Below, piece by piece: positions 1,087 through 64,000 of a stretch of 64,000 nucleotides of DNA; position 1 is the stretch's first letter; each line of letters begins with the position of its first letter. The position numbers and the translations under genes were made by a program. The DNA is taken from sequence record MK250017.1. One strand, written 5' to 3'. The notes under the pieces were generated by a model. That model was not told the DNA's origin, searched no databases, and saw only the letters and a program-made list of their open reading frames with translations.

Positions 1087-1094
1087 CAAAGATA
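1087..1094 (-). promoter_or_regulatory. Bacteroidetes-type -7 promoter element (TATCTTTG)
   Basis: Matches TAnnTTTG within the conserved ATGTATCTTTGTATT motif; 28 nt upstream of the pseT-like ATG. Confidence 0.75.
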
Positions 1095-9628: not shown

Positions 9629-9636
9629 CAAAGATA
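9629..9636 (-). promoter_or_regulatory. Bacteroidetes-type -7 promoter element
   Basis: TATCTTTG in the conserved motif upstream of 9590. Confidence 0.75.
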
Positions 9637-12815: not shown

Positions 12816-12823
12816 CAAAGATA
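12816..12823 (-). promoter_or_regulatory. Bacteroidetes-type -7 promoter element
   Basis: TATCTTTG upstream of 12775. Confidence 0.75.
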
Positions 12824-16955: not shown

Positions 16956-17050
16956 ATAAACAAAATAATTCTTATTTTTATTATTTATTCATTCTATATA
17001 TTTATTAAAAATGCAATTTAAAATAAATATTTAAATATGATATAACTATA

Positions 17051-28364: not shown

Positions 28365-29378
28365 TTATGCTTGTTTTTTATTTAATGCATAAAAATAATT
28401 CTTTAATTCAGAAAATGAAAAGAATTCTAAATAATTTAAACCATGTTTTTCTGCTATTTCTCTTTTCATAATATCTCTAGTTGTCCAAACATTAATAGCT
28501 GAAATATAATAATCTTTTTCTTTCGATCTCTTTTTCCATAAATTTAATTTCTTAATGTCGTCGGGATTATTTTTATCAAAACCATGTTTACCATGTGTCC
28601 AATGAAAATTACATTCAATATATAAATCATTATCTGCAATATAAAAATCACAAGCAAAAGGATATTCTTCTGATTTATATTGTCTTTTAATATCAGTATA
28701 TATTGTTTTTAAAAGTTCATATACTTTATCTTCTTCCTTTGAACATGTATGTGTTTTATGTTTCGTTTTAGATTCATGTATTTTGTCTATTGTTGATTGT
28801 AATTGTGTAGTNNNNNNNNNNNNNNNNNNNNNNNNNNNNNNNNCTTTTCTTTTTTCTTTTATAACTTCACATTTACCAACATTATCAACACCATACTTTT
28901 CTAGTACAGTTTCTTTACGTTTTTCCTTTACATAGTCACTAGCTAATGCCATTTCAGTACCATAACGTTCTAAATTCGTGGCTTTAATTTTATCCCATAC
29001 TTTCTATGATTTTGCAGGATTATCTACACCATAACGTTCAATATTTGTTTTCTTTATCTTTTCTTTAACACTTTCTAATTGAAATGGATTTGCAACTCCA
29101 TATTTTTTAATCATAGATTGCTTTTTCAGACCATATATACATTTAGAATTACCACAACTTTTGTGATATTTATAACCGTCACGTTTACATGGTTTTCCAC
29201 AAATATGACATCTTGGTACATCATTAGTATCATTTAATATACATAACAGTTTATCGATAATATCCATATCAGATTTATCGATAAACTGTGTATTTAAATA
29301 TTCAATAATATTAACAGGTATCTTATTTTTATTTAATGAATGCTCCTTATAATACTATTTTATATATTCATTATTCAT
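28365..29378 (-). CDS. Putative free-standing homing endonuclease (Zn ribbon, KYGV repeats, Vsr/PD-(D/E)XK-like C-terminus; TAG=Gln)
   Basis: Two track ORFs join through TAG; CHICG..CGNSKC, RYGVDNP repeats, CDFYI..IECNFHWTHG; contains an N gap. Confidence 0.7.
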
Positions 29379-32413: not shown

Positions 32414-32421
32414 CAAAGATA
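32414..32421 (-). promoter_or_regulatory. Bacteroidetes-type -7 promoter element
   Basis: TATCTTTG next to an N gap. Confidence 0.65.
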
Positions 32422-32445
32422 CATNNNNNNNNNNNNNNNNNNNNN

Positions 32446-35615: not shown

Positions 35616-36992
35616 CTTAGAAATATTGCTTTATATGTTCATAAATATTATCAGTAAATAACTCAGAAGAATATGTTGTATATTTCCTAATATTTTTATA
35701 TTCCTATAAAATTTGTTGTTCTATACAAAATGCAGTATAAAGTTCATATTGTTTATAATATAATATCTCTATATCTAATACAATACTAGAATTACGCAAT
35801 GCAGATGAACGTAATGAACGTATTCTCTACTTTGGTGTTTCTTTTTTTGTTATACCTATTTTATAAAGTATTTGGTTATTTGTTTTATCAATAACTTTTA
35901 AATAATATAATATTCCTATATGTGATTTTTGTTCAGGATGATTATTAAACCAATCTATATTATATCCACCTGGTACATATCCATTTAATATAGTTCTTTC
36001 TATTTTACATTTAGGACATTCCTAACCTGCATTTAGAAATTTAGAAATTCTTTTTTCAAAAATCCCATGTTTTGGACAAATAATCTAAATTTTAGATTGT
36101 TTTGTTTTATAAATGTCTCTATTGCTTTCTGGATATGTATAATAATCGCCATATTTTTCTTTACACATACCAATAATCTAATCATATGTAAATGATTTAT
36201 GTAATGCTCTCATTTTATTACCACATAATGGACAACCATTTTTATTGCCGTTTATTATATGTGTACGAGCTAATACATTAAAAGCACCATGTATAGGACA
36301 GATAACCGTTATTTCTGAATTTACTAATCCGGTCCAGTTATCTAAATTATATGTAAATTTATTATTATATTTTTTATTAGCTATTTCTAAAAATTCTTCT
36401 TTTGTTATTCTGGATTCAATTTGAGCTTTTTTATTTGCTAATGTTCCCTTGTATGTTTTATCTTTATATTTCTATGCACACATTGGACATCCAAATTTAT
36501 TTCTTAAATGATCCATCGGGCGTTGCCAGAATGTTCCATGTTCTGGACAAATTATTTCAACTGGAGTTCGCATAGTTATATATTTTACTTTACTATAATC
36601 AAACTTATTATTGAATAATTTTTCACCTCTATTTATGAAACTTTGTTTATAAAACTCATTTCCACGGACTATTTCTTCACCCTCATCATTACATGCTAGG
36701 GGCAAGGCGCTTCCACCATTATTGGAATCTAATGGCGTACTCCCCGAAGGGATAGTCTCTGAACCTTCCTAATGAGTAGTCAATTCATTAGGCTTGGCTG
36801 CAGATTCTTGTACTATATTTTCTATTAAATTATCTGACATCTAAAAAGTATTTTTATGTTTCATTTTATTTATCGTGATAATAAAATATAAAATATGAAT
36901 ATACACATTCCTGCAATTCACCTTGTTATTCAATGCCACTTACGCAGCAAGGGAGCCATTTTTACAATCTGCCTCAACAGCAGTGTACGCTA
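35616..36992 (-). mobile_element. Group I intron in NAMPT
   Basis: Exon 1 ends in U and the intron ends in G; P AATTGCAGGAA, Q AATCTGCAGC, R TCAGAGACTA, S AAGAAATAGTCC; IGS AAAATG-G-CTC (36953-36962) pairs both exons. Confidence 0.92.
35617..36840 (-). CDS. Intron-encoded endonuclease (three CPxHG..CPxC Zn-ribbon repeats + YKIGIT GIY-YIG-like domain; TAG=Gln)
   Basis: Frame open from ATG 36840 (or 36864) to TAA next to the 3' splice site. Confidence 0.8.
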
Positions 36993-39027: not shown

Positions 39028-39035
39028 CAAAGATA
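39028..39035 (-). promoter_or_regulatory. Bacteroidetes-type -7 promoter element
   Basis: TATCTTTG upstream of 38987. Confidence 0.75.
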
Positions 39036-39889: not shown

Positions 39890-39897
39890 CAAAGATA
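39890..39897 (-). promoter_or_regulatory. Bacteroidetes-type -7 promoter element
   Basis: TATCTTTG upstream of 39863. Confidence 0.75.
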
Positions 39898-39968: not shown

Positions 39969-40985
39969 TTACATGATATATTGTAAAAGCATTCTTGTTT
40001 CTTCATCTTGTCCGAGTTTTTTATTAGCCTCTCTCAAAATCTAATTAACTCGTGTTTCTGTCATATTGTTTTCTTCTGCAATTTGCCAGGTATTTTTCTC
40101 AGGACGACCATTAATAGCATAGCATGCACAAACAATTTCACCATTTCTTTTACCCATAACTCTCTTGATATTATCTTCAAGTTCTCTTGTTAAATCTTCA
40201 TTTTCAAGACTACTTCCAGGCTCATTGAAAACATTATTTGTTGTCATATCACCTAATGTTACTTTAGAATCTCCATCATCTCCAACAGATTGATCTAAAC
40301 TATTTGCACGAGCATTTGCTTTCATCGTCTATACAAATGAATCATAAGTTAAATTAGGATGTTTCTTAACTAATACATCATAAATATCATCAATATCAGG
40401 TTCATAACCATTCTTATTAAATAAACGTTCTTTTACACGAGCAGCTTCACGAGCAATACTACCCATATTACGAGGAACTGCCATATGACCACCTACTTCA
40501 TCAACTGCCATCATAATCTCACGACGAATATACCAAATAGCATATGATACAAATTTTACATCTTTTTCTGGTGTACTTGGATCATATGTTTCAGCTGCTT
40601 TCATAAGTCCAATATTACCATATTGAATTAAATCTTCTTTAGGAATATTAAGATTTTTATACTTATTAACAACAGTAACAACAAACGGAAGATTTGCAGA
40701 AACTAATTTATTTTTTGCTGCCTCTACCTATCTCTTATTTGACGAATGCTGAATAATATCTGCAAGTTTGCATTCATCTTCATGTGTTAATCTTTGTTTC
40801 TTATTAATTGCTTTTAAATATGCTACAAATGATTTTGCTGTATTTTCATCCTATGTAATAGTAAAATCATCATGTAAATCCATATGCATTCCATTATTAT
40901 CTTCATTAAGAGTATTTCGTAATGAACGAGAAATACCTTCCATAAGGCTATTATACAATGCTTTCTTTTTATTAATTACTCTCAT
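39969..40985 (-). CDS. RpoD-like sigma-70 factor with N-terminal extension (TAG=Gln, 4 TAG)
   Basis: Region 1.2 YLKAINK..LTHEDE; region 2 LVSANLPFVV..DLIQYGNIGLMKAAETYDP..KFVSYAIWYIRREI; region 4 TETRVNQIL; 338 aa. Confidence 0.9.
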
Positions 40986-41040
40986 ATTTTATTTAATAAA
41001 TTAATTTCAATAATTTATTATATTTATCAATATATAAAAA

Positions 41041-42738: not shown

Positions 42739-42746
42739 CAAAGATA
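42739..42746 (-). promoter_or_regulatory. Bacteroidetes-type -7 promoter element
   Basis: TATCTTTG upstream of 42698. Confidence 0.75.
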
Positions 42747-43589: not shown

Positions 43590-43652
43590 TTTTTATTCTT
43601 AAAATAATTTCACTTAAATAAATATCATAAATGAAATAGTTATCGTAACTAA

Positions 43653-47486: not shown

Positions 47487-47616
47487 TTAAAATAAATCAA
47501 TAATTATTTTATATATTTATTTTGTTATAATTATTTATTATAACATTATCATTTACCATAAAATTAAAGAGTATAACTTTTTAAATTATACTCTTTATTC
47601 TTTATTTTGTTTTTAA

Positions 47617-48246: not shown

Positions 48247-48334
48247 ATGTCATTAAATATATTTTATATATTTATTTTCTATATAATAAAAGAAAGAGTT
48301 AGATATTCGAATATCTAACTCTTTTATATTTTTA

Positions 48335-50230
48335 TTAAGAGAAATCACCACCGGTATCACCTCCACCAGTATCTGCAATTTCAGAACCACCAGATCCCAT
48401 ACCAGTATCACCACCAGAGAATGCTTCATCACCGCCAGAGAAGTCTCCTCCACCACCGAAGTCACCTCCACCGGTATCACCTTCAGCCCCGAATGAATCA
48501 TCAAAACCTGAACCTCCAGAATCACCGCCGAAATCCATTTCGCCTGGTGCACCATTACCTTGCTGTTCACCAACTTGTTTTCCCATTTCTTGGTGTTGTT
48601 TAATTATTTTGGCTTGTTCTAATCGTTCAATAATTTCGCCTTGCTTATATTTTTCATTAAGTGCAAAATCTTCATCAGACATACCTAGAAATTTCTCAAT
48701 AAGGAATTTCATACTAAAGAATGGTTTATTTTCACCTAATTGAATTTGTGCTAAAGTACCTATAATTTCAGCCCCCTATTTTAATGCAGTTCTTTCTTTT
48801 GCTTTAACAAATAAGTTTTCTTCATTAAATACAATACCTATACATTGTTTAAGCAATTCAGAATTAGCTAATTCTGGCATCATTAAACATATTTGCACCC
48901 ATAAAGGTTTTAACAAAATTTCACGATACATAACGCGAATACGACTAATAAATCTACTAAATGCATATTCCTCTCGTGTTATACTTGCATCATCTCCACC
49001 TAATGGATGTGCGCCATCAGCAGCAGGATCAATCATAAATCTATTTGCTGGAACTTTTGTTTCTAATATAAAACGTCTCCAAAAATATTTCAATGGTGTA
49101 ATATCACTTAAGTCATAACCTTCTGTAGGTATTTCTTCTATTGTCATCGAATTACCATCACGAATTGGGAAAAAATGAGTTTTGGAAAATGAAAAACGTG
49201 GTTGACCATTTACAACCATTTCACCAGATATTTCATCAACTGTTGTTTCTTCATTCCAATCTGCTTTTACTTCATTAACCTTTGCACGAGCTTTGTCCTA
49301 TGAAATATTACCTACTGGAATACCAACTTTAACACGTTTCTGTGAATTCATAATATTCCAAACCATTCTTGATGTTTCAAGTTGTGTTAACATTGTATAT
49401 GATCTTATTAATCCTTCTAGATAAGAAACTCGTGAATTTTCACCATACATACCTGTTGACCATGATATATATACAATATTTGAATCTGGTATTTTTCTTT
49501 CCAACTATGCATCACCTCTATATTGATACCATACTTTTACTTCTTTTCCTGTTTCTGGATCTATTTCAATATCAGGTTCAAGAGTTGCTGCATCCAATTC
49601 TCTCATACCTATAATACGTGTAGGTTTCATAAGATTATCAACAACAATTTCAAATGCCAAATATCCTTCAACTAAGAATTTTTTAAAATAATTCCATGCA
49701 TCATTTGATTTATCCCATCCATATGTAGAATATATAATCTTAAATGCTTTTTGACAATTTTTAATTAAATCATCTGCAGTTTCACCATTTGCACCTTTAT
49801 AATTAGTGTTAAGCTTTAATTTCAGAAGATTTAAATCTAACTATGCAAAATAATTGTTTTCATCTAATATTATAGTTTCATCTGAAATAGTATCAAGAAC
49901 AAAAGAAATTGTTTGTTGTGAAGCGAACTATCTTAACTATTCACGTCTCTATTGATATGATAAATCATAATATGCATAAGATTGTTTTGTATTTTTAGTA
50001 ATATCAACATACTATGAAAAAGAATTTTGATCCTAATTTAAACCATCGTTAAATGGGTATAATGAATCACCTGTATAATTATTTGTTTGAGCGGAACCTA
50101 AAGCTAATGATGTTTTAAGAATACTCTATGATGAATTTAAACTGAGAGAAGACAGATTAATAAGTGTATTGATTTTATTATGATCTGCTTTTCCTGGATT
50201 AAACTTTCTTGCTATATATTTTGTAGGCAT
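48335..50230 (-). CDS. Portal protein (T4 gp20-like; TAG=Gln, 10 TAG)
   Basis: Three track ORFs plus the N-terminal region join into 631 aa; YLEGLIR..QLE, KYFWRRF..KVP..RF, ITREEYAFSRFI; Gly/Asp-rich tail; AATAAATA at 50255. Confidence 0.9.
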
Positions 50231-50351
50231 TATTATGCTTTTATTTAGTTTTTATATTTATTATATATAAAAATAGGTAATATGTTTATGAAAAATACAT
50301 ATTACCTATCAAACAAAATTAAACAATTAAATATATATATTATGAAAAATG

Positions 50352-51985: not shown

Positions 51986-51993
51986 CAAAGATA
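51986..51993 (-). promoter_or_regulatory. Bacteroidetes-type -7 element, nested in an AAAACT-N17-TATAAA promoter (51977-52005)
   Basis: TATCTTTG upstream of 51953. Confidence 0.7.
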
Positions 51994-52614: not shown

Positions 52615-52652
52615 AATTGTAAAAAATTAAAAATATTACTAATGTCATGTCG

Positions 52653-52724
52653 TTGGGGATCCGAGACTCGAACTCGGCCTAAGAGTTTTAGAGACTCCTG
52701 TACTGACCACTATACTAATCCCCA
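52653..52724 (-). tRNA. Amber suppressor tRNA (anticodon CTA), Gln-like
   Basis: TGGGGAT/ATCCCCA (U1-A72, G2-C71, G3-C70); loop CT-CTA-AA; canonical T arm. Confidence 0.92.
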
Positions 52725-52754: not shown

Positions 52755-53525
52755 TTATTCTATATAATCGCTTAATTTCTATTTGTAATGATAATATGTT
52801 GATTTACATACATTATATTTAGTTAAAAAATCTGATTCTGATATATTATTTACAATATCATTCTTCATATCTACTGTTAATTTACTGCAGCCATTAGAAT
52901 TAAATAACTATATTTTCTAATTATATTTAGATATTTTCTACATTAATTCTTGTTTATCACGTGATAATATATATCGTTTTTTAACTAAAAGATTACTGAC
53001 ACTACCTCTTGTAAAATTAACATTCATATCACGTTTTAATTGTTGTAATGATGTAGATGAAACAATATTCTTTGTATTTACATCATAACAATATATTGTA
53101 TGCCTTCCATCATTCTATTTTTCATATGATTTTTTCTAAACTATTAATTTCTATTCATCTGTGAATTTATATCCATCAATACCACCATCACCACCTTTTG
53201 TTTGATTATAACCAGTAGCTCCATAACTATTATATTTACGAATATACTATTTTTCTAATAGATCTAATTGTTGTTTTATATCAGACGTGATATAATTATC
53301 AAATGTTTTTAATATATATAATGAAAAGGAATCTATACCATATTTCTTAAATGCTTTATATATTGGCGCATTATATCTATTATTAACAGAATTATTAATA
53401 TGATGTAATAATCTTTTATGTAGATTTATACTCTAACCAATATAACACTTTTTATTTATATCATTCTAAATCATATAAATACCCGGACACTATGGTATAT
53501 TATTTATAATATCATCTTTACTCAT
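52755..53525 (-). CDS. GIY-YIG homing endonuclease, Seg-like (TAG=Gln, ~11 TAG)
   Basis: Absent from the track; GIYMI..YIGQSINL..R..LEKQYI..GYNQTKGG; 256 aa. Confidence 0.9.
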
Positions 53526-53557
53526 AATAATTTTTAATATTTAATAACCATATTTTG

Positions 53558-53631
53558 TAGCCCCACTCAGATTCGAACTGAGTCAGCGAAAGTTAGAGTT
53601 TCGAATGCTTAAACCATTACATCATAGGGCA
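53558..53631 (-). tRNA. Second amber suppressor tRNA (anticodon CTA), Gln-like
   Basis: TGCCCTA/TGGGGCT (U1.U72 mismatch); CGAAA-CTCTAAC-TTTCG; CTCAG-TTCGAAT-CTGAG. Confidence 0.92.
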
Positions 53632-54626: not shown

Positions 54627-55710
54627 ACTTAATTATTTCATATAAATTTCTATTGTTATAGTTATTAATAAAATTGTCACAATCTTTCTGTGTAATATTA
54701 TTAATTGGTATAAATATATCATTTTTGCGATATATTAATTGCATTGATTCTGGTATTCCTAAACTTTTCTCTAATGCTTTCTTCTTTTTTTGTTCTTTAA
54801 TATATAAGTCTAATTCTTTTTCTGTTTTGATATTTTTCATGGGAAAAGGATAACGACATAATTTTTTTTCTTCTTCTAAATAATCGTCACCATTATATAT
54901 TTCAAAATTATCCGCTTTAGACCATATTCTGATATTTGATTTATTAAACGGTAATAGCTTATTATCAATACAATAATCAATAAATGTTTTAATATTAGCT
55001 GGATAATATAATTCAGGTAATTTATATCTTTTATATCTATTATCTTTATTATCATTTAAACAATATAAACGTTTAGTTTTTTGAAGTTCAACTATTGTAT
55101 TTCCCTTTAATAAATCTTTATTAATCTTTAATATAGGAATTGACATAAAAATAACTTGGTCATCTTCCCAGGCAACATTATATCCGTTTTGTTTTTCTAA
55201 TTCTTCATCAGCTTCATTAGAATTCATAACATATGAATGTTCCTTCCATAATATTCTGGATTGCCTACAATATACTTGAAATACACCAAAATCTAATTTA
55301 ATAATTCTGAATGTATATGGACCATTATTAGGTCTATTTGCTATTTCTTTATTATATTGTTTTATTACTTGTATATATTCCTTATATTTTAAAGAATTAA
55401 TTGTATCTTGTATCGCAAAATATCCTATATTAACTTTGCTTAATTGTGGACAATCTTTAACGAATTTTTGTATATCGAATAAACGGTCCAAATCCCATGA
55501 ATAACTATTATCTTTCCACTCAGCTTCAAAATTATTTTGTTTTAAGTTATCATATATATCTTTACGAATATCATTTTTAAATTTTGTACAATAATCTTTA
55601 ATTGTATGACAACTCCAATATTTTTTAATTGTGGTAATTTGTTTTTGAGATGGATGCTTTTTTATCACCCATCTCAACCATTCATTTATATCTATAATTT
55701 TATTATCCAT
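54619..55710 (-). CDS. Hypothetical protein
   Basis: 363 aa. Confidence 0.75.
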   Translation of the reverse strand: MDNKIIDINEWLRWVIKKHPSQKQITTIKKYWSCHTIKDYCTKFKNDIRKDIYDNLKQNNFEAEWKDNSYSWDLDRLFDIQKFVKDCPQLSKVNIGYFAIQDTINSLKYKEYIQVIKQYNKEIANRPNNGPYTFRIIKLDFGVFQVYCRQSRILWKEHSYVMNSNEADEELEKQNGYNVAWEDDQVIFMSIPILKINKDLLKGNTIVELQKTKRLYCLNDNKDNRYKRYKLPELYYPANIKTFIDYCIDNKLLPFNKSNIRIWSKADNFEIYNGDDYLEEEKKLCRYPFPMKNIKTEKELDLYIKEQKKKKALEKSLGIPESMQLIYRKNDIFIPINNITQKDCDNFINNYNNRNLYEIIKYE

Positions 55711-55714
55711 ATAA

Positions 55715-57430
55715 TCAATTCAAACCTGTTACTTTTCCATCTACAAAATCAATATGCTTAGCTGCTGGTTCTTTAGGTAATCCTGGCATACGCATCATAT
55801 TTCCTGCAATAACAACAAAAAATTCTGCACCATTATTAATCTTTATTTCATCTATATTAAATATTGTATTATTATTTACAGATGGAATAACCTTAGGATT
55901 ATCAGAGAATGAATATTGTGTTTTTGCCATGCAAATAGGATATTCATAAATTTCATTAATAAATTCATCTTCATGATTTTCATATGTTCTATCAAATCTT
56001 GAAATAAATTTTAATGCATCTTTTGAATATCTTATATTATCTGGATTAATACCATATACATTTTTACATAGATCCGCAATTTTTTCCTTCATACTATCTA
56101 ATGTATGATATGCAAAAATAGGTAACATTGGTTTCCTATTATTGTCTACAATATCAACAACCTCTTTTGCAAGATCAATAGCACCATCACTGCCATTTAA
56201 ATAACTTGTATTCTTAATACATTTTACATTTCTACATGTACAGAAATTCTCAAGAATACGCTGTTCATTATTTGTATCAGTATCAAATACATTATTTGTT
56301 ACAACAATTCTTACACCAAATTTCTTAATATTTGTAATATGTTGTTCAAGATTCTTTAATCCAATTTCAAGTGATTTAATATCTTCTTTAGATAGATCTG
56401 TACATCCACCTTGATTTTTCAATCCTGGAATTGTCGCAACTAATACTACAACATCTGGACATAAACCATTCTTTCTACATTTAATATCTATAAATTTCTC
56501 TGCACCAAGATCTGAACCAAATCCTGCTTCAGTAACCACATAATCACATAATGATAAACCCATACGTGTCGCAATAACAGAATTACAACCATGAGCAATA
56601 TTAGCAAATGGTCCACCATGAACAATAACAGGATTATTATCCAAACTTTGAACAAGATTTGGTTTAATTGCATCTGATAGTAAAGCAACAATAGAACCTG
56701 TTATACCTAATTCACTGCAGAACATAAAACTACCATCTATACGTTCTGCAATAATAATCTTATTGATACGTCTGCGAAGATCATCAATATCACGTGCCAT
56801 ACAGAAAACTGCCATTAATTCAGAAGCGGGTGTAATATCAAATCCTGTTTGAATTAATTTACCATATTTCTGTGTTGTATATATTGTTCGAAGAGAACGA
56901 TCATTAATATCTAAACAACGTCTAAATGTAATATTTTTAATTTTTGATTCTTCTTCTGGATTCTGATAAAAATAATTATCAATAGCAGCTGCAATCATAT
57001 TATTTGCAGTTGTTATAGCATGAAAATCTCCTGTAAAATGTAAATTAATTTTATCCATAGGAACAATCTGTGAATAACCACCACCACATGCACCTCCTTT
57101 CATTCCGAAACAAGGTCCTAATGATGGTTCGCGTAACACCGCGATTGAATTTTTCTTGAGTTTTCGAAGTGCATCATTCAATCCAATACTTACAGTTGTT
57201 TTACCAATACCAGATTTAGTAGGACTAATAGAAGTAACAAGAATAAGATGTTTATCTGTATAACTTGTATACGGTTTCATTAATTCCAAAGGAATCTTTC
57301 CCATATACTTTCCATACATTTCAATATTTCCATTTGATGGTATATTACCTGTAGGAAATAATTTATTAAAAACACAATCAATACTTTGCATAGATGCTTC
57401 TTGAGCAATCTGAATATCTGATTTCATCAT
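55715..57430 (-). CDS. fhs: Formate--tetrahydrofolate ligase
   Basis: TSISPTKSGIGKTT, REPSLGPCFGMKGGACGGG, LHFTGDFHA, HGGPFANIAHGCNS, MPGLPKEP. Confidence 0.95.
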   Translation of the reverse strand: MMKSDIQIAQEASMQSIDCVFNKLFPTGNIPSNGNIEMYGKYMGKIPLELMKPYTSYTDKHLILVTSISPTKSGIGKTTVSIGLNDALRKLKKNSIAVLREPSLGPCFGMKGGACGGGYSQIVPMDKINLHFTGDFHAITTANNMIAAAIDNYFYQNPEEESKIKNITFRRCLDINDRSLRTIYTTQKYGKLIQTGFDITPASELMAVFCMARDIDDLRRRINKIIIAERIDGSFMFCSELGITGSIVALLSDAIKPNLVQSLDNNPVIVHGGPFANIAHGCNSVIATRMGLSLCDYVVTEAGFGSDLGAEKFIDIKCRKNGLCPDVVVLVATIPGLKNQGGCTDLSKEDIKSLEIGLKNLEQHITNIKKFGVRIVVTNNVFDTDTNNEQRILENFCTCRNVKCIKNTSYLNGSDGAIDLAKEVVDIVDNNRKPMLPIFAYHTLDSMKEKIADLCKNVYGINPDNIRYSKDALKFISRFDRTYENHEDEFINEIYEYPICMAKTQYSFSDNPKVIPSVNNNTIFNIDEIKINNGAEFFVVIAGNMMRMPGLPKEPAAKHIDFVDGKVTGLN

Positions 57431-57591
57431 AAATTTTTTTATTATAAATTCAACTTACTTTTTATACAATAAATTATATAAAAAGTTATATAAAAATTAT
57501 AGGAGAATAACAAACGAATGTTATTCTCCTATGTTTATTATATTAAATTATGTTTGTATCTGAATTTAAACGTATTCACAAAGTTATTTAA

Positions 57592-58098
57592 TTAATCGTT
57601 AAAACATTTACAATTTATTGTCCTCCATTCAGTATCACCTGATAATTCTCCTGTTTTAAACTTTTCATAAAATGGACAAATTCCTTTACCATTATATTCA
57701 TGTCCTTCTGATGTTAAATCACCTGGAAAATTATCACAATTACAACAGAGATCTTCAAATCTGTATGGATTATCTTTATTTTCCATATATTCATCAAGTT
57801 CTTCTTGATCTTCTTTTGAAAGTTTCCTGTCATTTAATCGTTTTTTATGTTCTTCTTTAATATCAAAACGTTTATTATCTGTCATTACAGTTCCTGTATT
57901 TTTTATCAATACACCAAATCTGTCTTTTGTAAAATTCTGCCATGATTCAGCAGGGTTTTCACGTATAGATTTTATTGTTCTTGGTTTCTTCTGCTTAATG
58001 GGAGAAATGTAATTCCATAATACATGTGAATTCCAGAGTTTCTTTAATCGTGAAATCCACTTTTTCTTCTGACGATAACGTCGCTCGGCTCTATCCAT
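57592..58098 (-). CDS. Hypothetical protein with basic N-terminus and C-terminal Cys cluster
   Basis: MDRAERRYRQ..CCNCDNF..CPF..CKC. Confidence 0.7.
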   Translation of the reverse strand: MDRAERRYRQKKKWISRLKKLWNSHVLWNYISPIKQKKPRTIKSIRENPAESWQNFTKDRFGVLIKNTGTVMTDNKRFDIKEEHKKRLNDRKLSKEDQEELDEYMENKDNPYRFEDLCCNCDNFPGDLTSEGHEYNGKGICPFYEKFKTGELSGDTEWRTINCKCFND

Positions 58099-58262
58099 AT
58101 TCTTTTGATATAAAAATTTTAAATCATATACATGTCAGTAACATATATATTAATCCCAAAATTACAAACATAATTATTACCTATATAATGGAAATTATGT
58201 GAATACGTATATCTTTATTCATTCAATAAAATAAATTTTATATATTATACTTAGAAAGTATA

Positions 58263-58784
58263 TTAATGTCTTAATGTTCTTTCAGAAAGTAAAACATCAA
58301 GCTTATTATTCATATCTAAAATTTGATTTTTCAAATCTCCAATACACTATATCTGCTCTTTGTTTTCTATCAAAAATTGTTGAATTTTTTTAAGTTTTTC
58401 ATCAAAAATTATCTAATTTTTCTCAATTTTTTCAATGTTTTCTTTATCCTATTGTTTTTCTGCAATAAATTTAACAATCTCTATTAATGCATCATTATCT
58501 AATATATTAAATGACATTGTTTTGATTTCTTTGTCATTATAATCTACATATTTTACATCTATATGATTAATATAATTTTTACTATATGATAACATACTAC
58601 CAGATGCACCACCTGCTATTAAATTAATATCCAATATACGAGATGATATTATTTCACCATTTGAAACAATAACACCTGATTTTGTTATAGGATCTTCACC
58701 AAAGCAGAATAAATTACTTTTATATGCACCAATACGTTTAAGTACATTCTTTACATTTCCTTTTGCGAATATAATATCACTCAT
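58263..58784 (-). CDS. Hypothetical protein with coiled-coil tail (TAG=Gln, 3 TAG)
   Basis: Read-through of the TAG at 58449 gives 173 aa; AATAAATA at 58810. Confidence 0.7.
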
Positions 58785-58858
58785 TATTAAAGTAACTATT
58801 TCTTTATTCTATTTATTGATTTTTAATAAATATATAAAGTTTATTTTAATTAAAGAAG

Positions 58859-59305
58859 ATGAATAATAATCAATACGAAATACTACCAACTGCAAAATCT
58901 AATATTAATGCATATAACCGTTATCCATTTACATGTTATGAAGAAGCAGTTCAGAATATTATGTAGAAAAATTTAAAACCTGGAGAATAGGCTGTTGCAT
59001 ATTATTTTGATGAAAATTCTATTATAGGTATAAGTGCAATAACTGCATTTGGAAATTTAAAAAAAGCAGGAAATATTATTTTTAAAAGTGGTCAGGATCT
59101 CGATAGAGATCTAGAACATTTGCATAAAGATGTTGTTATGCACAAAAAGGTAATTAATAATATGGTTGATACTATTAATCATGCAAATAAAAACTGGTCA
59201 TAGATTGAAGGTAGAATTAAAAAAATAGAATAGAAATTTGATAAAGAACATGATACATTACATGTACAAGTAATCGATTTAGATAATTATGATTTAGATG
59301 TTTAA
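58859..59305 (+). CDS. Hypothetical protein (TAG=Gln, 4 TAG)
   Basis: Absent from the track; 148 aa; AATAAATA at 58825. Confidence 0.7.
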
Positions 59306-59361
59306 AATAATAAAGGATTATAACTCAATAAAAATGAATTATAATCCTTTATTTGTTTCTT

Positions 59362-59544
59362 TTAAAATAAAGACGCAATCTTTCCTTTAATGTGATTTTT
59401 AACATCACTAATAATTGTAATTTTCTTCGTATCCTTCTTTTTCTCAGGAACGAAATTAAATTGTGGAGTCACATCAAAATCCAAACCTTTTGAAGGACAT
59501 CCAGGACAAATCTTTACCCGCCGCGGTGCCATTTTCTTTACCAT
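59362..59544 (-). CDS. Small basic protein (CPGC)
   Basis: 60 aa. Confidence 0.55.
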   Translation of the reverse strand: MVKKMAPRRVKICPGCPSKGLDFDVTPQFNFVPEKKKDTKKITIISDVKNHIKGKIASLF

Positions 59545-59577
59545 TAGTTTCCTCTAAAAATTTAATTATTAAAATAT

Positions 59578-59949
59578 TTATTTTTCTTTTGTAAGATCCT
59601 TCAAGTTGAAGATCTTAGTCTTTAATGGTTCAACTTCTTTACCATCTATTACTTCATACATAGAAAATACATATTTATCAGTAAAACCTTGACATTTCCC
59701 CAATACAACACCTTTAAATATTTTTTCGGATGGTTTATGAAAAACTTTCATTTTTATTTTTTCATTATCTAATAGTCTAGATTGTCTATCTAAAAATGAT
59801 TGAGTTAATACATAATCATCTTCAACTTCATTTGATGTGTCATCTTCATTTTCATTTGATGTATCTTCAGTATCATCTTCATTTTCTACATCCTGAAGAT
59901 ACATCATTTCTTCTAAATCTATATTAGCTTCGTCGTACATGTTAAACAT
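59578..59949 (-). CDS. Protein with acidic N-terminus
   Basis: 123 aa. Confidence 0.65.
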   Translation of the reverse strand: MFNMYDEANIDLEEMMYLQDVENEDDTEDTSNENEDDTSNEVEDDYVLTQSFLDRQSRLLDNEKIKMKVFHKPSEKIFKGVVLGKCQGFTDKYVFSMYEVIDGKEVEPLKTKIFNLKDLTKEK

Positions 59950-60010
59950 AGTTGTTAGATTATTTTATAAATTTAATTTGTTTATTTATACAACAATCTA
60001 AAATTAATTT

Positions 60011-60769
60011 TTAATAGTAGTCAGATAACTTAATTTGTGATTCATATACATTATCATTTTTATAATCAATTCTGTCATTTTTATCATTTCTTATATCTGA
60101 TAAAATTTCTTTCTTATCTGCTTGAATAACCAAAGGAATTGTAGAAATGTAAGAATTAATTATTTTATCATTTATCGGTGCTTTATATAATGGTCCATCT
60201 GCAACCCAGAAAAACTTATCCATAAATGCAATATAATATTGCATGCCTATCCTAGATAATGCATACATAGAAGCATTCCATAATGCAACATCTTTATGAG
60301 TCGTCCAATATATATTATCATCATATTTTTCTAATATATTTTTTGCACGTGGATCTGTAGTAAATCCTCCAAATTGAAGTATATCATAATCTACAGGTAT
60401 ATTATGAATAAAAGTTAAAAAAGTCTCATTATTTTTTAAAAATTTTATATCATCTTCCATTACTAATATATTAGAAAATCCTCTATCATAACATTCTTTT
60501 ACAATTGCATAATGATTTCTTGCACAATCATATTCATTTGCTTTTGTAAATCTACCTTTTCCAGATTCATTAAATGCAGATGCTATTAAACTATTATAAG
60601 GAAATTTTGTCGTATAATGATAACGTAACCATGTACTTTCATTAATATTATCAAAATTCATTTCCTTAAATTGTGTTTCCATATTATTTCTGCGATCTTT
60701 TCGATCACTTAAGTTTAATACATAACATATATCAAACTTTTCTTTTAATACATCTTGTAATTTTTCCAT
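60011..60769 (-). CDS. Glycosyltransferase family 25-like protein (start corrected to ATG 60769)
   Basis: YVLNLSDRKDRR, CARNH, LVMEDDI. Confidence 0.75.
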   Translation of the reverse strand: MEKLQDVLKEKFDICYVLNLSDRKDRRNNMETQFKEMNFDNINESTWLRYHYTTKFPYNSLIASAFNESGKGRFTKANEYDCARNHYAIVKECYDRGFSNILVMEDDIKFLKNNETFLTFIHNIPVDYDILQFGGFTTDPRAKNILEKYDDNIYWTTHKDVALWNASMYALSRIGMQYYIAFMDKFFWVADGPLYKAPINDKIINSYISTIPLVIQADKKEILSDIRNDKNDRIDYKNDNVYESQIKLSDYY

Positions 60770-60824
60770 AATAATAAAAAACTCTAATAGATAAATGTTA
60801 AAAATATCTATTAGAGCATACATT

Positions 60825-61370
60825 TTACATTTTTAATATATCTTGCATATTAACTGGTTCTGTATTGGTATTTTTAGATTTTCTTATTATTTGTTTCACT
60901 TGTGGTTGTTCAAAATAAATACCACTTTTATTATATTTACCTTTATCATATGCTCGTTCAATAGCTTTACGAACTCTACGCTTTGTTTTACCATCCATCA
61001 TATAATGATGCTGCTGATAATAAAGTTCACCTTGCTGATACATCATAGATTCAATAAACTGCTTTCTCTGCTCATGCTTTTGCTTTGTTTTTTCTCTTAT
61101 ATCTGATTCTGATTTTGCTTTTGCAATAGCTGCTTGTGTAATAAGAGTATTCATACCAGATTCTTCATTTAACGTCTCTACTTGCTTATCTAAATTATTA
61201 TCAATAGGTGTACCTGGAATTACTGTATTACCATCATCATATGCATATGATCTTTCAATTCTATCTTGTACTTTATCTTTAGATAACAACATTTTATTTA
61301 ATGTTTCATTATCAATAACTGAACCATTCTCAGTAATATAATTATTTAATGTGTTACTATATGCGGGCAT
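60825..61370 (-). CDS. Hypothetical protein
   Basis: 181 aa. Confidence 0.7.
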   Translation of the reverse strand: MPAYSNTLNNYITENGSVIDNETLNKMLLSKDKVQDRIERSYAYDDGNTVIPGTPIDNNLDKQVETLNEESGMNTLITQAAIAKAKSESDIREKTKQKHEQRKQFIESMMYQQGELYYQQHHYMMDGKTKRRVRKAIERAYDKGKYNKSGIYFEQPQVKQIIRKSKNTNTEPVNMQDILKM

Positions 61371-61394
61371 AATTTATTAATTGTATTTTTTAAT

Positions 61395-61781
61395 TTAAAA
61401 TGAATGTATATTATTATCAAGACTTGTCATTTCAGATGCTTTAAATTTACCATAAATCTTATTCCATCCTTTTGATAAACCGTTACATAACATACTGGTA
61501 TAATATGCAAATGGATTACTAAATCGTTCTGGATCAAAGCTTCGCCAATACATTGCAACATCCAACATTGCTGTCTGTATACAATCTTCCTTATCCTCTT
61601 GACATTTATAATGTTTCTTTTTTGCTAAATTTTCAGCAATTAACTAAAGCATGACAACAGCATTATATGTAAGTTCATCTCTCTATTTTGAAAGAACTAT
61701 TTCTTTCATCAACTCTTTATTCTACACATATGGTTTTCCACCTTTAGTTTTAATACCTTCTACTTTACTAAAATCTTCCAT
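61395..61781 (-). CDS. Late-transcription sigma factor, T4 gp55-like (TAG=Gln, 3 TAG)
   Basis: Absent from the track; PYVQNKEL (cf. HYVNNKEL), LIAENL, FDPERFSNPFAYYT (cf. FDETKYKNPHAYIT); 128 aa. Confidence 0.85.
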
Positions 61782-61809
61782 GGTTTTTAAATAAAAATAG
61801 CTATTTCTT

Positions 61810-61838
61810 ATTTTACTAAGAAATAGCTAAAAAGTTTT
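61810..61838 (-). promoter_or_regulatory. Degenerate sigma-70-type promoter AAAACT-N17-TAAAAT
   Basis: About 30 nt upstream of the gp55-like ATG. Confidence 0.4.
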
Positions 61839-61845
61839 AATAAAT

Positions 61846-62931
61846 TCATTTATTAATTGCTTCCAAATGTTCTTTTTCATTAGGTGTTAAATTATCAGGA
61901 ATCAAATAATGTACGCATACAAAATAATCTCCTCTTTGATTCATATCAGGTCGTTTAAGACCTTCACCAGATAATCGCATAACTGTACCTTCTTTAATAC
62001 AACTCTGCAACTTTATTGTTTTTGATACACCAGAAGGTATATTAACTGTATATGAACAACCAAGTAATAGTTTATAATAAGGTACATGAATATGCTCTAT
62101 TACATTCAAACCATCAACTTGATATTTGTTTGTATCAAATTTATAATCAGCTATAGCAATAAAATTACCATTCTGCCCAACTGATTTCTTTGATTCTGAT
62201 CCTTTACCACTATATACTTTATATTCACCATTCTGAATGCCTGTATTAAATTCAATTTCAATCTTTACTTCTTGCTTTTCAAATCCAGAACCACCACAAT
62301 GATTACATTTATTTTCTACATAAAAACCTGTTCCATGACATAATGGACAAATTTCTTCTTGAATTGAAAATGTTCCTCTTCCTATAAGAGACTGGTGAAT
62401 AATTTTTCCTGCACCATGACACTTTGGACATGTTTTCTGTCCAGTTCCACCAGCACCATGACATGACGGACAACGTACATCTCTCTTATATTTAACAACC
62501 TTCTTAATACCATTAAATATATCTTCAATAGTAACAGGAATTTTCATTTGAATATCTCTGCCTGGTTGAACTTGATTTCTCTGTTGTTTAGCACCTCCAA
62601 AACCGCTAAATCCTCCAAATGGATTAAATCCTCCAAATGGATCAAAACCCGATCCACCAAATGGATCAAAACCTGAACCACCAAATGGATTTTGCTGACC
62701 ATTTTCATCACCATATGTATCATAATTCTGTTTCTTCTGTGGATCACTCAATACTTCATATGCATGATTCACATCCTTAAATTTCTCTTCAGCTTCTTTT
62801 ACTTCAGATGGTGATTTACCTTTCTGCATATCAGGATGATATTTCTTTGAAAGTTTTCTATATGCTGTCTTTAAGTCTTTCTCATTACAATCTCTAGAAA
62901 CACCTAAAATTTCGTATAAGTCTTTTGCCAT
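61846..62931 (-). CDS. dnaJ: Chaperone DnaJ
   Basis: J domain HPD, G/F region, CxxCxGxG repeats. Confidence 0.95.
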   Translation of the reverse strand: MAKDLYEILGVSRDCNEKDLKTAYRKLSKKYHPDMQKGKSPSEVKEAEEKFKDVNHAYEVLSDPQKKQNYDTYGDENGQQNPFGGSGFDPFGGSGFDPFGGFNPFGGFSGFGGAKQQRNQVQPGRDIQMKIPVTIEDIFNGIKKVVKYKRDVRCPSCHGAGGTGQKTCPKCHGAGKIIHQSLIGRGTFSIQEEICPLCHGTGFYVENKCNHCGGSGFEKQEVKIEIEFNTGIQNGEYKVYSGKGSESKKSVGQNGNFIAIADYKFDTNKYQVDGLNVIEHIHVPYYKLLLGCSYTVNIPSGVSKTIKLQSCIKEGTVMRLSGEGLKRPDMNQRGDYFVCVHYLIPDNLTPNEKEHLEAINK

Positions 62932-63068
62932 ATTTAATAACTATATAATAACATTTAAAATAAAAAGGGAACTGAATACAATCCTCTTGTATACGTTCCC
63001 TTCTTCAAATACTTTTACTCACTTTTTATAGTTTTCATTTATTCTAAATTAAAATATTGTATTCTATT

Positions 63069-63097
63069 ATTTTATAGAATTTTTAGAAGTTAGTCTA
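63069..63097 (-). promoter_or_regulatory. Sigma-70-type promoter TAGACT-N17-TAAAAT (overlaps the dnaK terminator)
   Basis: -35 at 63092-63097, -10 at 63069-63074. Confidence 0.5.
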
Positions 63098-63126
63098 TAA
63101 ATTTATAGACTAACTTTTATATCTTT

Positions 63127-64000
63127 TTAGACCTCTTCGTATTCTGCTTCCTGAACGTTATCATCTGTCTTTGAATTCTCAGATGTTGAATTATTTGCAG
63201 TTGCATCACCAAAACCTGCATTTGCAAACATATCGTTAGGGTTTTGCGCAGAATTTTCCTGAGGTTGAGAACCACCAGCATTCTTATACATTTCTTCAAC
63301 AATTGGCTTAAATACTGTCTCAAGCTCTACACGTGCAGATTCTGCTGCAACAGCATCCTTCTTAGAAACTGCATCAAGTACTGCACTAATCTTTGTCTTC
63401 AATGTATCTTTCTTATCAGAAGGAATTGATGAACCTGTCTTCTCATCATCCATATACTTCTGAACCTGAGTTGCATACTGCTCTGCACCATTCAACTTAT
63501 CAACTTCATCCTTCTTCTTCTTATCTGCTTCTGCAAACTTCTCTGCATCTGCCTTAATACGTGCAATCTCTTCATCTGAAAGTGCATTAGGAGACTGAAT
63601 TGTTACCTTCTGCTCTTTATTTGTACCCTTATCTTTTGCTGTTACTTCAAGAATACCATCAGCATTAATATCAAATGTTACTTCAATCTGAGGAACACCC
63701 TTTGGTGCAGGTGCAATACCCTCCAAATTAAAATTACCAATTACCTTATTATCTGCAGACATTGGACGCTCACCCTGAAGAACCTTAATTGTTACTGCAG
63801 GCTGATTATCTACTGCTGTAGTAAATACCTGTGACTTACGTGTAGGAATAGTTGTATTTGCATCAATCAACTTTGCCATCTCACAACCATTTACCTCAAT
63901 ACCCAATGAAATTGGTGTTACATCAAGAAGAAGAACTGAATCTTCTGTTGCATTACCAGCAAGTGTATTTGCCTGAATTGCAGCACCAAGGGCAACAGCC
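63127..64000 (-). CDS. dnaK: Chaperone DnaK (3' part; runs off the window)
   Basis: [52 protein letters not shown] tail. Confidence 0.95.

What the first reader, a model, noticed from the sequence alone, without database searches (positions are those of the whole stretch)
61395..61838. Late sigma (gp55-like) is invisible in the standard code and triple amber-gated
Seen: TAG at codons 20, 33 and 46, all before the region-2 motif; a degenerate phage-sigma-type promoter lies just upstream. Inference: one small gene makes the whole late programme conditional on recoding, even for TAG-free late genes such as the prohead protease.
Basis: partly seen in the sequence, partly recalled or inferred. Interest (0 to 1): 0.75.

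Follow-up and report, generated by a model that had tools for sequence, protein, structure and literature searches.

The report
Amber-interrupted late sigma of Lak megaphage
A small T4-gp55-type sigma factor gene of the Prevotella megaphage Lak-A1 contains three in-frame TAG codons read as glutamine, so it can only be made once the phage's own suppressor tRNA works. This plausibly ties late transcription to the phage's known genetic-code switch, but it is one of many genes with that dependency.

Summary
On the minus strand, 61781..61395 encodes a 128-aa protein with TAG at codons 20, 33 and 46. Under table 11 only a 57-aa remnant is open.

The window is Prevotella phage Lak-A1, a known TAG=Gln megaphage. 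The protein is a minimal gp55-family sigma (phrog_234 E=5e-11; hhalign 92% to T4 gp55; AF2 model's top PDB match is gp55). It is the only such gene in the 541-kb genome.

The gene is a TAG island among TAG-free neighbours (DnaK, DnaJ and others), and that pattern holds across about a dozen divergent Lak lineages. The TAG positions themselves turn over among Gln codons. Its TAG load is ordinary for TAG-using genes.

New context:
- TAG-free genes sit behind a host-sigmaA-type box, TATCTTTG: 41 of 42 genes, p=2e-8.
- TAG-bearing genes sit behind an AT-rich box, ATAAATA[T/A], resembling T4's late promoter: p=1e-17.
- Both results replicate in Lak-B1.

The gating inference is physically sound but not unique. 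224 of 575 ORFs also need TAG decoding, including terminase, portal, a DNA polymerase fragment and a second RpoD-like sigma. Expression timing, and which sigma reads the box, are untested. This is a new twist on the published model that recoding regulates late genes.

The parts
61395..61781 (-). gp55-family minimal sigma factor gene, 128 aa when TAG is read as Gln (P0001)
   Evidence: Translation. phrog_234 E=4.9e-11. T4 gp55 is the only PDB sequence hit. hhalign gives 92% probability, E=5e-7. AF2 model has pLDDT 87.6 and its Foldseek top hit is 7d7c_F gp55, TM 0.67.
61722..61724 (-). In-frame TAG, codon 20
   Evidence: Relatives have CAA, TCN, AGY or AAN at this column.
61683..61685 (-). In-frame TAG, codon 33
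   Evidence: Relatives have CAA, GAA/GAG or AAA at this column.
61644..61646 (-). In-frame TAG, codon 46
   Evidence: Relatives have TAG, CAG, CAT, TGG, TAT or ATG at this column.
61798..61829 (-). Intrinsic-terminator-like hairpin (13 pairs, 6-nt loop, T-run) between dnaJ and sigma, ending 17 nt before the sigma ATG
   Evidence: Terminator scan. RNA fold -18 kcal/mol, z=-3.15. A hairpin is kept, with different sequence, in Lak-B-type, L053 and L060 relatives.
61846..61853 (-). Degenerate ATAAATGA box, 72 nt upstream of the sigma ATG, overlapping the dnaJ stop codon
   Evidence: The Lak-B-type relative L005 has ATAAATAA at the same place. Exact ATAAATAT lies at -37 in L056 and -35 in L009. Not above chance on its own.
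61846..62931 (-). DnaJ-like gene directly upstream, TAG-free (0 TAG among 19 Gln codons)
   Evidence: Pfam DnaJ domains in the syntenic genes of relatives. TAG-free in every lineage examined.
60825..61370 (-). Conserved 181-aa gene directly downstream, TAG-free, function unknown
   Evidence: Conserved throughout the Lak clade only.
52652..52724 (-). tRNA with CUA anticodon and a tRNA-Gln-like acceptor stem (U1-A72, G2-C71, G3-C70). One of only two tRNA-CUA genes in the genome.
   Evidence: ARAGORN. Rfam tRNA 60.5 bits. Sequence read.
53557..53631 (-). Second, atypical tRNA with CUA anticodon
   Evidence: Called by ARAGORN only; no Rfam tRNA match. Its Lak-B1 homolog is split by an intron-like insert.
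39969..40985 (-). Second phage sigma, RpoD/SigA-like (regions 2-4), 338 aa, 4 in-frame TAG, with ATAAATAT at -42
   Evidence: phrog_351 E=1.5e-43. PDB 6wmr_Z RpoD E=4e-25. Box position.
50254..50261 (-). Example of the ATAAATAT box, 31 nt upstream of the portal gene (48335-50230, 10 TAG)
16998..17005 (-). ATAAATAT box 50 nt upstream of the TAG-free head-maturation protease (15201-16955)
51986..51993 (-). Example of the early-type box TATCTTTG (matches the Bacteroidota sigmaA -7 consensus TAnnTTTG), 40 nt upstream of a TAG-free gene
   Evidence: Genome-wide, 41 of 42 such genes are TAG-free.

Best explanation
The gene encodes a minimal gp55-type sigma of Lak megaphage: a sigma region-2-like helical domain plus a short, flexible, sequence-conserved C-terminal tail.

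Shown here:
- It belongs to the gp55 family and is single-copy.
- Its reading frame needs UAG decoded as Gln at three codons.
- The phage carries its only tRNA-CUA genes 8 kb downstream on the same strand, and carries a TAG-free RF2.
- The gene is a TAG-bearing island in a TAG-free cluster, directly behind the dnaJ terminator.
- Genome-wide, TAG-free genes follow a host-sigmaA-type box, while TAG-bearing genes follow a single AT-rich box, ATAAATA[T/A], about 30-39 nt before the start codon.

Inferred:
- Early in infection the host holoenzyme transcribes the TAG-free genes.
- Any sigma mRNA made then, by read-through of the dnaJ terminator, yields only a 19-residue peptide.
- Once tRNA-CUA accumulates, full-length sigma and the second sigma are made.
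- The phage-directed polymerase then turns on the ATAAATA[T/A] class (terminase, portal, head protease, tail and lysis genes).
- In some lineages this class includes the sigma gene itself, which would give positive feedback.

The TAGs therefore impose a real translational dependency on the code switch. They are probably maintained at the level of the gene's class (translated only after the switch), not as three specific sites.
For: Identity: the window equals Lak-A1 MK250015 at 100%.

gp55 membership: phrog_234 E=4.9e-11, and T4 gp55 itself falls in phrog_234. hhalign 92%, E=5e-7. Foldseek top hit 7d7c_F, probability 1.0, TM 0.67. Single copy in Lak-A1 and in Lak-B1.

TAG = Gln: the same alignment columns alternate between TAG and CAA/CAG, including the near-invariant Q69. 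tRNA-CUA with a Gln-type acceptor stem. RF2 is present and TAG-free. Code 15 is published for Lak.

Purifying selection: Lak-A1 and Lak-B1 differ at 33 nucleotides in the gene but only 2 amino acids.

Island pattern across lineages: DnaJ 0 TAG in every lineage; the downstream gene 0-1 TAG; sigma 1-5 TAG. Sigma's TAG share of Gln codons is 28 of 53 across 10 lineages.

Promoter/TAG partition: the early box precedes 42 ORFs, 41 of them TAG-free (p=2e-8). ATAAATAW precedes 112 ORFs against 49+-7 in shuffles, 84 of them TAG-bearing (p=1e-17). Replicated in Lak-B1 with 43 of 44 and 80 of 113.

Box genes include large terminase, portal, head protease, tape-measure-like and endolysin-like proteins.

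Exact box at -37 and -35 of the sigma gene in L056 and L009. Terminator directly upstream.
Against: - There are no timing data of any kind.
- Sigma's TAG load is typical of TAG-using genes. 'At least one TAG in all 10 lineages' is expected by drift, P=0.19-0.6.
- The TAG positions are not conserved outside Lak-A/B/C.
- The ATAAATAW class also contains a DNA helicase and topoisomerase II, so it is post-early rather than strictly late.
- A second, full-length RpoD-like phage sigma could be the factor that reads the box.
- In Lak-A1 the sigma gene has no canonical box, only a 2-mismatch version at -72.
- Non-Lak phages with the same sigma family show a different upstream word, GATATATAA.
- No gp45-type or DnaN-type clamp was found.
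- Lak-B1 lacks an intact tRNA-CUA, so the decoder is not always the simple tRNA assumed here.
Confidence: 0.55

Rival explanations
1. Permissive drift. The gene is simply translated after the code switch, for reasons set by its transcription. In such genes CAA, CAG and TAG are interchangeable Gln codons in a 26% G+C genome. Under this view the three TAGs are neutral and carry no gating function of their own.
For: TAG positions turn over among Gln sites, and L053 is the mirror image of Lak-A1. Sigma's TAG density and TAG share are unremarkable among TAG-bearing ORFs. Retention of three TAGs between Lak-A1 and Lak-B1 is expected at that divergence, by my estimate. Relatives L056 and L009 carry the post-early box, so there the gene would be transcribed late anyway.
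Against: In Lak-A1 and most lineages the gene sits inside a TAG-free, early-looking cluster with no promoter of its own. TAG share of Gln codons is 53% against 33% in the box class (binomial p=0.003, lineages not independent). Whatever its origin, the dependency on suppression is physically real.
Confidence: 0.35
2. The RpoD-like phage sigma (39969-40985), not the gp55-like protein, reads the ATAAATA[T/A] box. The gp55-like sigma would then serve a smaller or later promoter set that was not detected here.
For: The second sigma has regions 2-4. The box class includes replication genes. Both sigma genes can themselves carry the box. No second AT-rich motif could be separated from the background.
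Against: The box is a single -10-like element with no visible -35 partner, and it shares the ATAAATA core with T4's gp55-dependent TATAAATA. The T4 consensus is from established knowledge; the Lak consensus is. A single-element promoter is the architecture expected for a sigma that has only region 2.
Confidence: 0.3
3. The TAGs are true stops, and the gene is a decaying pseudogene or encodes only short peptides.
For: Under table 11 the frame is closed three times.
Against: There is strong purifying selection: Lak-A1 and Lak-B1 differ at 33 nucleotides but only 2 amino acids. The family is conserved across 2,428 cluster representatives. TAG aligns with conserved Gln. The genome has tRNA-CUA, RF2 and 1,321 in-frame TAGs. 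The full-length fold is confident.
Confidence: 0.02

Closest known systems
T4 gp55, late sigma factor (PDB 7d7c chain F; PHROG 234)
   Same: Same family by profile and fold. It is a sigma with region 2 and no region 4. Both have an acidic or hydrophobic C-terminal tail containing SLD (T4 ...SLDFLYEAND, Lak ...SLDNNIHSF). The Lak genome has an enriched single-box AT-rich upstream element sharing the ATAAATA core with T4's TATAAATA.
   Different: It is 128 aa against 185 aa, and lacks T4 residues of roughly 110-175. It has three in-frame TAG codons. No gp45-type clamp or gp33 was identified. Exact TATAAATA is not enriched in the window, 26 found against 39.9 expected. The host is a Bacteroidota bacterium.
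Stop-codon recoding as a regulator of late and lytic genes (Borges et al., preprint 10.1101/2021.08.26.457843; Devoto et al. 2019, PMC6784885)
   Same: Same phage clade and the same code (TAG=Gln). Same logic: TAG-containing genes cannot be made until the code change takes effect. Devoto et al. already noted that TAG-free regions alternate with TAG-rich structural regions.
   Different: Those papers do not mention sigma factors or promoters in this context ('sigma' and 'promoter' each occur 0 times in the preprint). Here the recoded gene is a transcription master regulator, and TAG use is tied to two promoter classes. That adds a transcriptional layer to a model that was purely translational.
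Classical T4 gene 55 amber mutants (established knowledge, not tested here)
   Same: In both, late transcription depends on an amber suppressor tRNA because the late sigma gene carries UAG.
   Different: In T4 this is a laboratory conditional-lethal mutation rescued by a host suppressor. In Lak it is the wild-type state, and the phage supplies the suppressor.
Code-change module of Jade phages (suppressor tRNA, tRNA synthetase and release factor upstream of the lysis cassette; Borges et al.)
   Same: In both, the code-switch parts are written in standard code and lie near the genes they unlock. In Lak-A1 RF2 is TAG-free and 1.5 kb downstream of an early box, and the tRNA-CUA genes lie in a TAG-free cluster.
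   Different: Jade phages recode TGA to Trp and the module precedes lysis genes. In Lak the nearby unlocked gene is a sigma factor.

Membership tests
T4 gp55-type late sigma (PHROG 234) | Significant sequence-profile match to the family | tested here: met
   phrog_234 E=4.9e-11 over residues 16-100. T4 gp55 scores 2.9e-69 to the same family. hhalign of the Lak family against T4 gp55 gives 92.4%, E=5.3e-7.
T4 gp55-type late sigma (PHROG 234) | gp55 / sigma region-2 fold | tested here: met
   AF2 model pLDDT 87.6, pTM 0.79. The Foldseek best PDB hit is 7d7c_F gp55 (prob 1.00, TM 0.67, 116 columns), followed by sigma region-2 domains. The E-value of 4e-3 is modest.
T4 gp55-type late sigma (PHROG 234) | No sigma region 4; recognises a single -10-like promoter element | tested here: inconclusive
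   At 128 aa there is no room for region 4. A single-element box, ATAAATA[T/A], is enriched at -20 to -55 (112 ORFs against 49+-7). Which sigma reads it was not tested.
T4 gp55-type late sigma (PHROG 234) | C-terminal tail that binds the sliding clamp, and dependence on gp33 and gp45 | tested here: inconclusive
   The tail (residues 112-128) is disordered but conserved and contains SLD. A gp44-like clamp loader is present. No gp45 (phrog_223) or DnaN (TIGR00663) match was found. gp33 was not searched.
T4 gp55-type late sigma (PHROG 234) | Acts late in infection | not testable with these tools
   RNA-library contigs only show that the sequence is present.
Code-15 (TAG=Gln) recoded phage gene | In-frame TAG at positions where homologs have Gln | tested here: met
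   Columns 12, 20, 33, 36, 46 and 69 alternate between TAG and CAA/CAG across lineages. Q69 is near-invariant in the family.
Code-15 (TAG=Gln) recoded phage gene | Genome carries the decoding machinery (tRNA-CUA, RF2) and uses TAA/TGA as stops | tested here: met
   Two tRNA-CUA genes. prfB scores 406 bits, over its cut-off, with no internal stops. There are 1,321 in-frame TAGs in 224 ORFs.
Recoding as temporal gate (Borges model) | Early genes are compatible with the standard code; later genes are not | tested here: met
   Host-sigmaA-type box genes: 41 of 42 TAG-free in Lak-A1 and 43 of 44 in Lak-B1. ATAAATAW box genes: 75% and 71% TAG-bearing. That the first box is 'early' is inferred from its match to the Bacteroidota -7 consensus.
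Recoding as temporal gate (Borges model) | Protein appears only after suppressor activity | not testable with these tools
   This needs time-resolved proteomics, or a reporter assay with and without tRNA-CUA.

The most novel reading that the evidence does not exclude
The code switch is the master clock of Lak's transcription cascade. Both phage sigma genes are amber-locked, and the gp55-like one sits as a silent passenger in an early transcript. In some lineages it carries its own post-early box, so that suppressor-tRNA maturation ignites a self-amplifying sigma loop. In Lak-B that maturation would even require splicing of an intron out of the anticodon loop. The loop then fires about 110 ATAAATA[T/A] promoters. 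That would be a translational checkpoint placed on top of a transcriptional switch, a regulatory architecture not described for any phage.
Probability: 0.2. Interest if true: 0.8.

Novelty: new variant of a known kind. Interest (0 to 1): 0.5.

Why it matters
Lak megaphages are uncultivated, and their infection programme is unknown. The published idea that stop-codon recoding times late gene expression rests mainly on which genes contain TAG.

This analysis adds three things:
1. The phage's only gp55-type sigma, and also its RpoD-like sigma, are themselves behind the amber lock.
2. TAG-free and TAG-bearing genes are preceded by two different, strongly enriched upstream boxes. This holds in two genomes that are about 20% divergent.
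3. It gives concrete promoter sequences and a small protein that can be tested in vitro without culturing the phage.

If the link holds, recoding would control not only translation of late proteins but also the transcription of TAG-free late genes.

Tried and rejected
- Exact T4 late promoter TATAAATA: 26 matches against 39.9+-6.5 expected, so not enriched.
- Generic sigma-70 promoter scan: 108 against 104.8 in shuffles, uninformative.
- A third motif, ATGAATAAAGATA, seen upstream of DnaK and one other gene: only one occurrence in the intergenic upstream survey, so dropped.
- The conserved downstream 181-aa gene as a family-wide partner of the sigma: it is conserved in the Lak clade only. The equally placed ~160-aa gene of the non-Lak relatives is unrelated (hhalign 0.2%). 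It has no PDB relatives.
- A second 128-aa TAG island (MK250015 488114-488500) as a hidden paralog: no similarity.
- gp45 (phrog_223) and DnaN (TIGR00663) searches of the whole genome: no hit. The 273-aa ORF beside the clamp loader had no PHROG or PDB match. No complex prediction was run, because no binding claim is made.
- Retention of the three TAGs between Lak-A1 and Lak-B1 as evidence of selection: not significant at that divergence.
- 'Every lineage keeps at least one TAG': expected by drift (P=0.19 at p=0.33).
- The ATAAATAT box in non-Lak phages with the same sigma family: not enriched, 4 against 2.7.
- RNA-library contigs: they cover the gene but cannot show transcript ends, strand, level or timing.
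- The masked N runs of the window (5946-6108, 6317-6344, 28812-28843, 32425-32445) were kept masked in the whole-genome copy and were never read.

Full report
WHAT IS THERE

The finding's interval holds a gene on the minus strand. The ATG is at 61781 and the TAA stop at 61397-61395, giving 128 codons. TAG occurs at codon 20 (61724-61722), codon 33 (61685-61683) and codon 46 (61646-61644). Under table 11 the only in-frame remnant is a 57-aa ORF starting at Met72. The rest of the stated interval (61782-61838) is not coding. It contains a 13-bp hairpin followed by a T-run (61829-61798). This is the intrinsic-terminator-like end of the upstream dnaJ gene, and it stops 17 nt before the sigma ATG.

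WHERE IT COMES FROM

Window 55000-63900 is 100% identical to Prevotella phage Lak-A1 (MK250015, 541,664 bp). The whole window matches that record without a mismatch outside the masked N runs. I kept those N runs masked in my working copy and never read them. Lak phages are already known to read TAG as glutamine and to carry tRNA-CUA and RF2 (Devoto et al. 2019; Crisci et al. 2021). The alternative code is therefore shown by the genome itself, not assumed:
- two tRNA-CUA genes lie in the window, and they are the only two in the genome;
- the better-formed one (52652-52724; Rfam tRNA 60.5 bits) has a tRNA-Gln-type acceptor stem;
- prfB is present without internal stops;
- 224 of 575 ORFs hold 1,321 in-frame TAGs.

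IS IT A GP55 HOMOLOG?

Yes.
- PHROG 234 ('late sigma transcription factor') matches at E=4.9e-11, and T4 gp55 itself belongs to that PHROG.
- T4 gp55 is the only PDB sequence hit.
- A profile of 22 family members aligns to T4 gp55 residues 4-108 with 92% probability.
- An AlphaFold2 model built on 38 sequences is confident (pLDDT 87.6). Its best structural match in the PDB is gp55 in the T4 late-promoter open complex (7d7c_F, probability 1.0, TM 0.67), followed by sigma region-2 domains.

The protein is a shortened gp55. It has a beta-hairpin, four helices, and a disordered but sequence-conserved tail (...SLDNNIHSF in Lak...GIYSI in more distant members). T4 gp55 ends in ...SLDFLYEAND. From established knowledge, that tail binds the sliding clamp in T4. 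Here this is only a resemblance. I found a gp44-like clamp loader but no clamp.

The gene is single-copy in Lak-A1 and Lak-B1. The family is large, with 2,428 cluster representatives, mostly 110-135 aa.

ARE THE TAGS CONSERVED?

Only in part.
- Lak-A1, A2, C1, B1 and B7, plus seven IMG/VR contigs, keep TAG at 20, 33 and 46.
- Lak-A1 and Lak-B1 differ at 33 of 387 nucleotides but only 2 amino acids, so the gene is under strong purifying selection.
- In lineages with 51-81% protein identity, TAG sits elsewhere: at 7, 12, 14, 17, 27, 34, 36, 39, 43, 69, 70, 80 or 103. The Lak-A1 positions then carry CAA, CAG or other codons. L053 is the mirror image of Lak-A1, with TAG at 12 and 69 and CAA/CAG at 20, 33 and 46.
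- One 673-kb, 41% G+C Lak-like contig has none, and it barely uses TAG at all.
- Non-Lak relatives have none.

What is conserved is the status of the gene, not the sites. In about a dozen lineages DnaK and DnaJ are TAG-free and the downstream gene has 0-1 TAG, while sigma has 1-5.

IS THAT MORE THAN CHANCE?

Compared with its neighbours, clearly yes. Compared with TAG-using genes, no. Sigma is at the 79th percentile for TAG density and the 68th for TAG share of Gln codons. 'At least one TAG in all ten lineages' has probability 0.19-0.6 under simple drift.

Two weak signals go the other way:
- TAG makes up 28 of 53 Gln codons across ten lineages, against 33% in comparable genes (binomial p=0.003).
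- TAGs lie more 5' than CAA/CAG codons (p=0.015).

The lineages are not independent, however. The 5' bias is also a small genome-wide trend.

Sigma is one of 15 isolated TAG islands among the 164 ORFs with two or more TAGs. At least two of the other islands are homing endonucleases.

PROMOTER CONTEXT (NEW)

Upstream regions fall into two classes.

Class 1 is a roughly 40-nt conserved block containing TATCTTTG, an exact match to the Bacteroidota sigmaA -7 consensus TAnnTTTG (the consensus is from established knowledge). It precedes 42 ORFs in Lak-A1, of which 41 are TAG-free (Fisher p=2e-8). Those genes use TAG for 1 of 181 Gln codons.

Class 2 is a single AT-rich box, ATAAATA[T/A], peaking 30-39 nt before the start codon.
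- It precedes 112 ORFs, against 49+-7 in shuffles, and 84 of them are TAG-bearing (p=1e-17).
- Both results replicate in Lak-B1 (43 of 44; 80 of 113, p=6e-15).
- Box genes include large terminase, portal, the TAG-free head-maturation protease, tape-measure-like and endolysin-like proteins, and the second sigma.
- They also include a helicase and topoisomerase II. The class is therefore 'post-early', not strictly late.

The box shares the ATAAATA core with T4's gp55-dependent TATAAATA, although exact TATAAATA is not enriched. Neither Devoto et al. nor the Borges preprint mentions promoters or a recoded sigma. No paper in the searchable library links gp55 to recoding.

WHERE SIGMA FITS

In Lak-A1 the sigma gene has neither box at the canonical distance. 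There is only ATAAATGA at -72, overlapping the dnaJ stop and followed by the hairpin. The nearest early box on its strand is 6 kb upstream. No box occurs in the spacers from there down to the tRNA-CUA genes, which lie 8 kb downstream of sigma on the same strand. In L056 and L009, where the neighbourhood differs, an exact ATAAATAT sits at -37 and -35.

My reading is as follows. Sigma mRNA can arise by read-through of an early transcript. Its translation waits for tRNA-CUA. In at least some lineages the gene also belongs to the class it may itself activate.

LIMITS

- Nothing here measures timing.
- RNA-library contigs from three studies cover the ORF, and an X8 contig spanning all three TAG positions shows no differences from the window. 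Contigs cannot show transcripts, though.
- The RpoD-like phage sigma (39969-40985, 4 TAG) is an equally available reader of the box.
- Lak-B1 has no intact tRNA-CUA. Its homolog is split in the anticodon loop by a 245-nt insert that weakly resembles a group I intron.

VERDICT

The idea that late transcription is locked behind the code switch is physically reasonable, and it gains support from the promoter/TAG partition. It is nonetheless a special case of a published model. The lock is shared by hundreds of genes, and the three sites themselves are not special.

Noticed in passing
window 1087-1094, 9629-9636, 12816-12823, 32414-32421, 39028-39035, 39890-39897, 42739-42746, 51986-51993 (all minus strand): A conserved ~40-nt block (T-run, rGAATAAAATATG, TATCTTTG, TATTGTAAAT) lies 34-105 nt upstream of TAG-free genes. 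TATCTTTG fits the Bacteroidota sigmaA -7 consensus. Genome-wide it precedes 42 ORFs, 41 of them TAG-free; in Lak-B1 it is 43 of 44.
   Followed up: yes
window 50254-50261, 48268-48275, 47513-47520, 41020-41027, 16998-17005 (minus strand); 17023-17030, 43618-43625 (plus strand): ATAAATA[T/A] box, peaking 30-39 nt before start codons. It precedes 112 ORFs in Lak-A1 (shuffles 49+-7), 75% of them TAG-bearing. The class includes terminase, portal, head protease and the second sigma, but also a helicase and topoisomerase II.
   Followed up: yes
window 39969-40985 (-): A second phage sigma, RpoD/SigA-like with regions 2-4. It is 338 aa, carries 4 in-frame TAG, and has an ATAAATAT box at -42. Both phage sigmas therefore need TAG decoding.
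   Followed up: partly
window 52755-53525 (-), 35617-36939 (-), 2955-3278 (+), 28365-29378 (-): Homing endonuclease genes carry many in-frame TAGs (11, 8, 5 and 2); the first and third have the highest TAG density in the window. The GIY-YIG gene with 11 TAGs sits exactly between the two tRNA-CUA genes. The one at 28365-29378 abuts a DNA polymerase fragment (29387-30934).
   Followed up: partly
L118 12033-12350 (Lak-B1 MK250020 412033-412350): Lak-B1 has no intact tRNA-CUA although 221 of its ORFs use TAG. At the syntenic site a homolog of the first Lak-A1 tRNA-CUA is split in its anticodon loop by about 245 nt. Joining the flanks restores the loop CUCUAAA (anticodon CUA). Rfam's group I intron model matches the insert over its full length but below threshold (15.7 bits, E=0.17).
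   Followed up: partly
window 53557-53631 (-): The first tRNA-CUA is called by ARAGORN only, with the anticodon at position 36. It gets no match to Rfam's tRNA model at E<=1, unlike the second (60.5 bits). It may be atypical or not functional as it stands.
   Followed up: partly
whole Lak-A1 record (L067-L094): TAG is mildly enriched towards the 5' ends of genes. Its share of Gln codons falls from 0.51 in the first decile to about 0.3 in the last. The trend survives removal of the first 30% of each ORF (p=0.004) but is not significant in genes whose start is anchored by the box (p=0.14). Part of it may come from over-extended ORF starts.
   Followed up: partly
window 61644-61724: The three TAGs are exactly 13 codons apart (20, 33, 46). 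I saw no periodic structure or repeat behind this, and relatives do not share the spacing. It is probably coincidence.
   Followed up: no
window 61395-61448 (residues 112-128 of the sigma): The C-terminal tail is predicted disordered (pLDDT below 50 from residue 120) yet highly conserved across the family (SLDNNIHSF; GIYSI in distant members). It recalls the clamp-binding tail of T4 gp55 (...SLDFLYEAND).
   Followed up: partly
L014-L046 (IMG/VR contigs, mean 35% G+C): Non-Lak phages with the same mini-sigma use the standard code in this gene. Their commonest upstream word is GATATATAA (28 of 144 genes). They always have a ~160-aa gene with a PD-(D/E)XK-like motif directly downstream, and it is unrelated to the Lak downstream gene.
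   Followed up: partly
L008 (IMGVR_UViG_3300021431_000075, 673 kb contig, 41% G+C): A Lak-like contig has the same DnaK-DnaJ-sigma synteny but essentially no in-frame TAG in the 6 kb examined, and none in sigma. It is a possible standard-code relative for comparison.
   Followed up: no
MK250015 367252-368055 (L095): A 267-aa ORF with 5 TAGs lies immediately upstream of the TAG-free RF2 gene, downstream of an early box and a tRNA-Leu(UAA) gene. It was not annotated here.
   Followed up: no
MK250015 290204-290276: ARAGORN calls a tRNA with anticodon UUA, which would read TAA, in both Lak-A1 and Lak-B1. Crisci et al. report such tRNAs in all Lak genomes without evidence that TAA is recoded.
   Followed up: no
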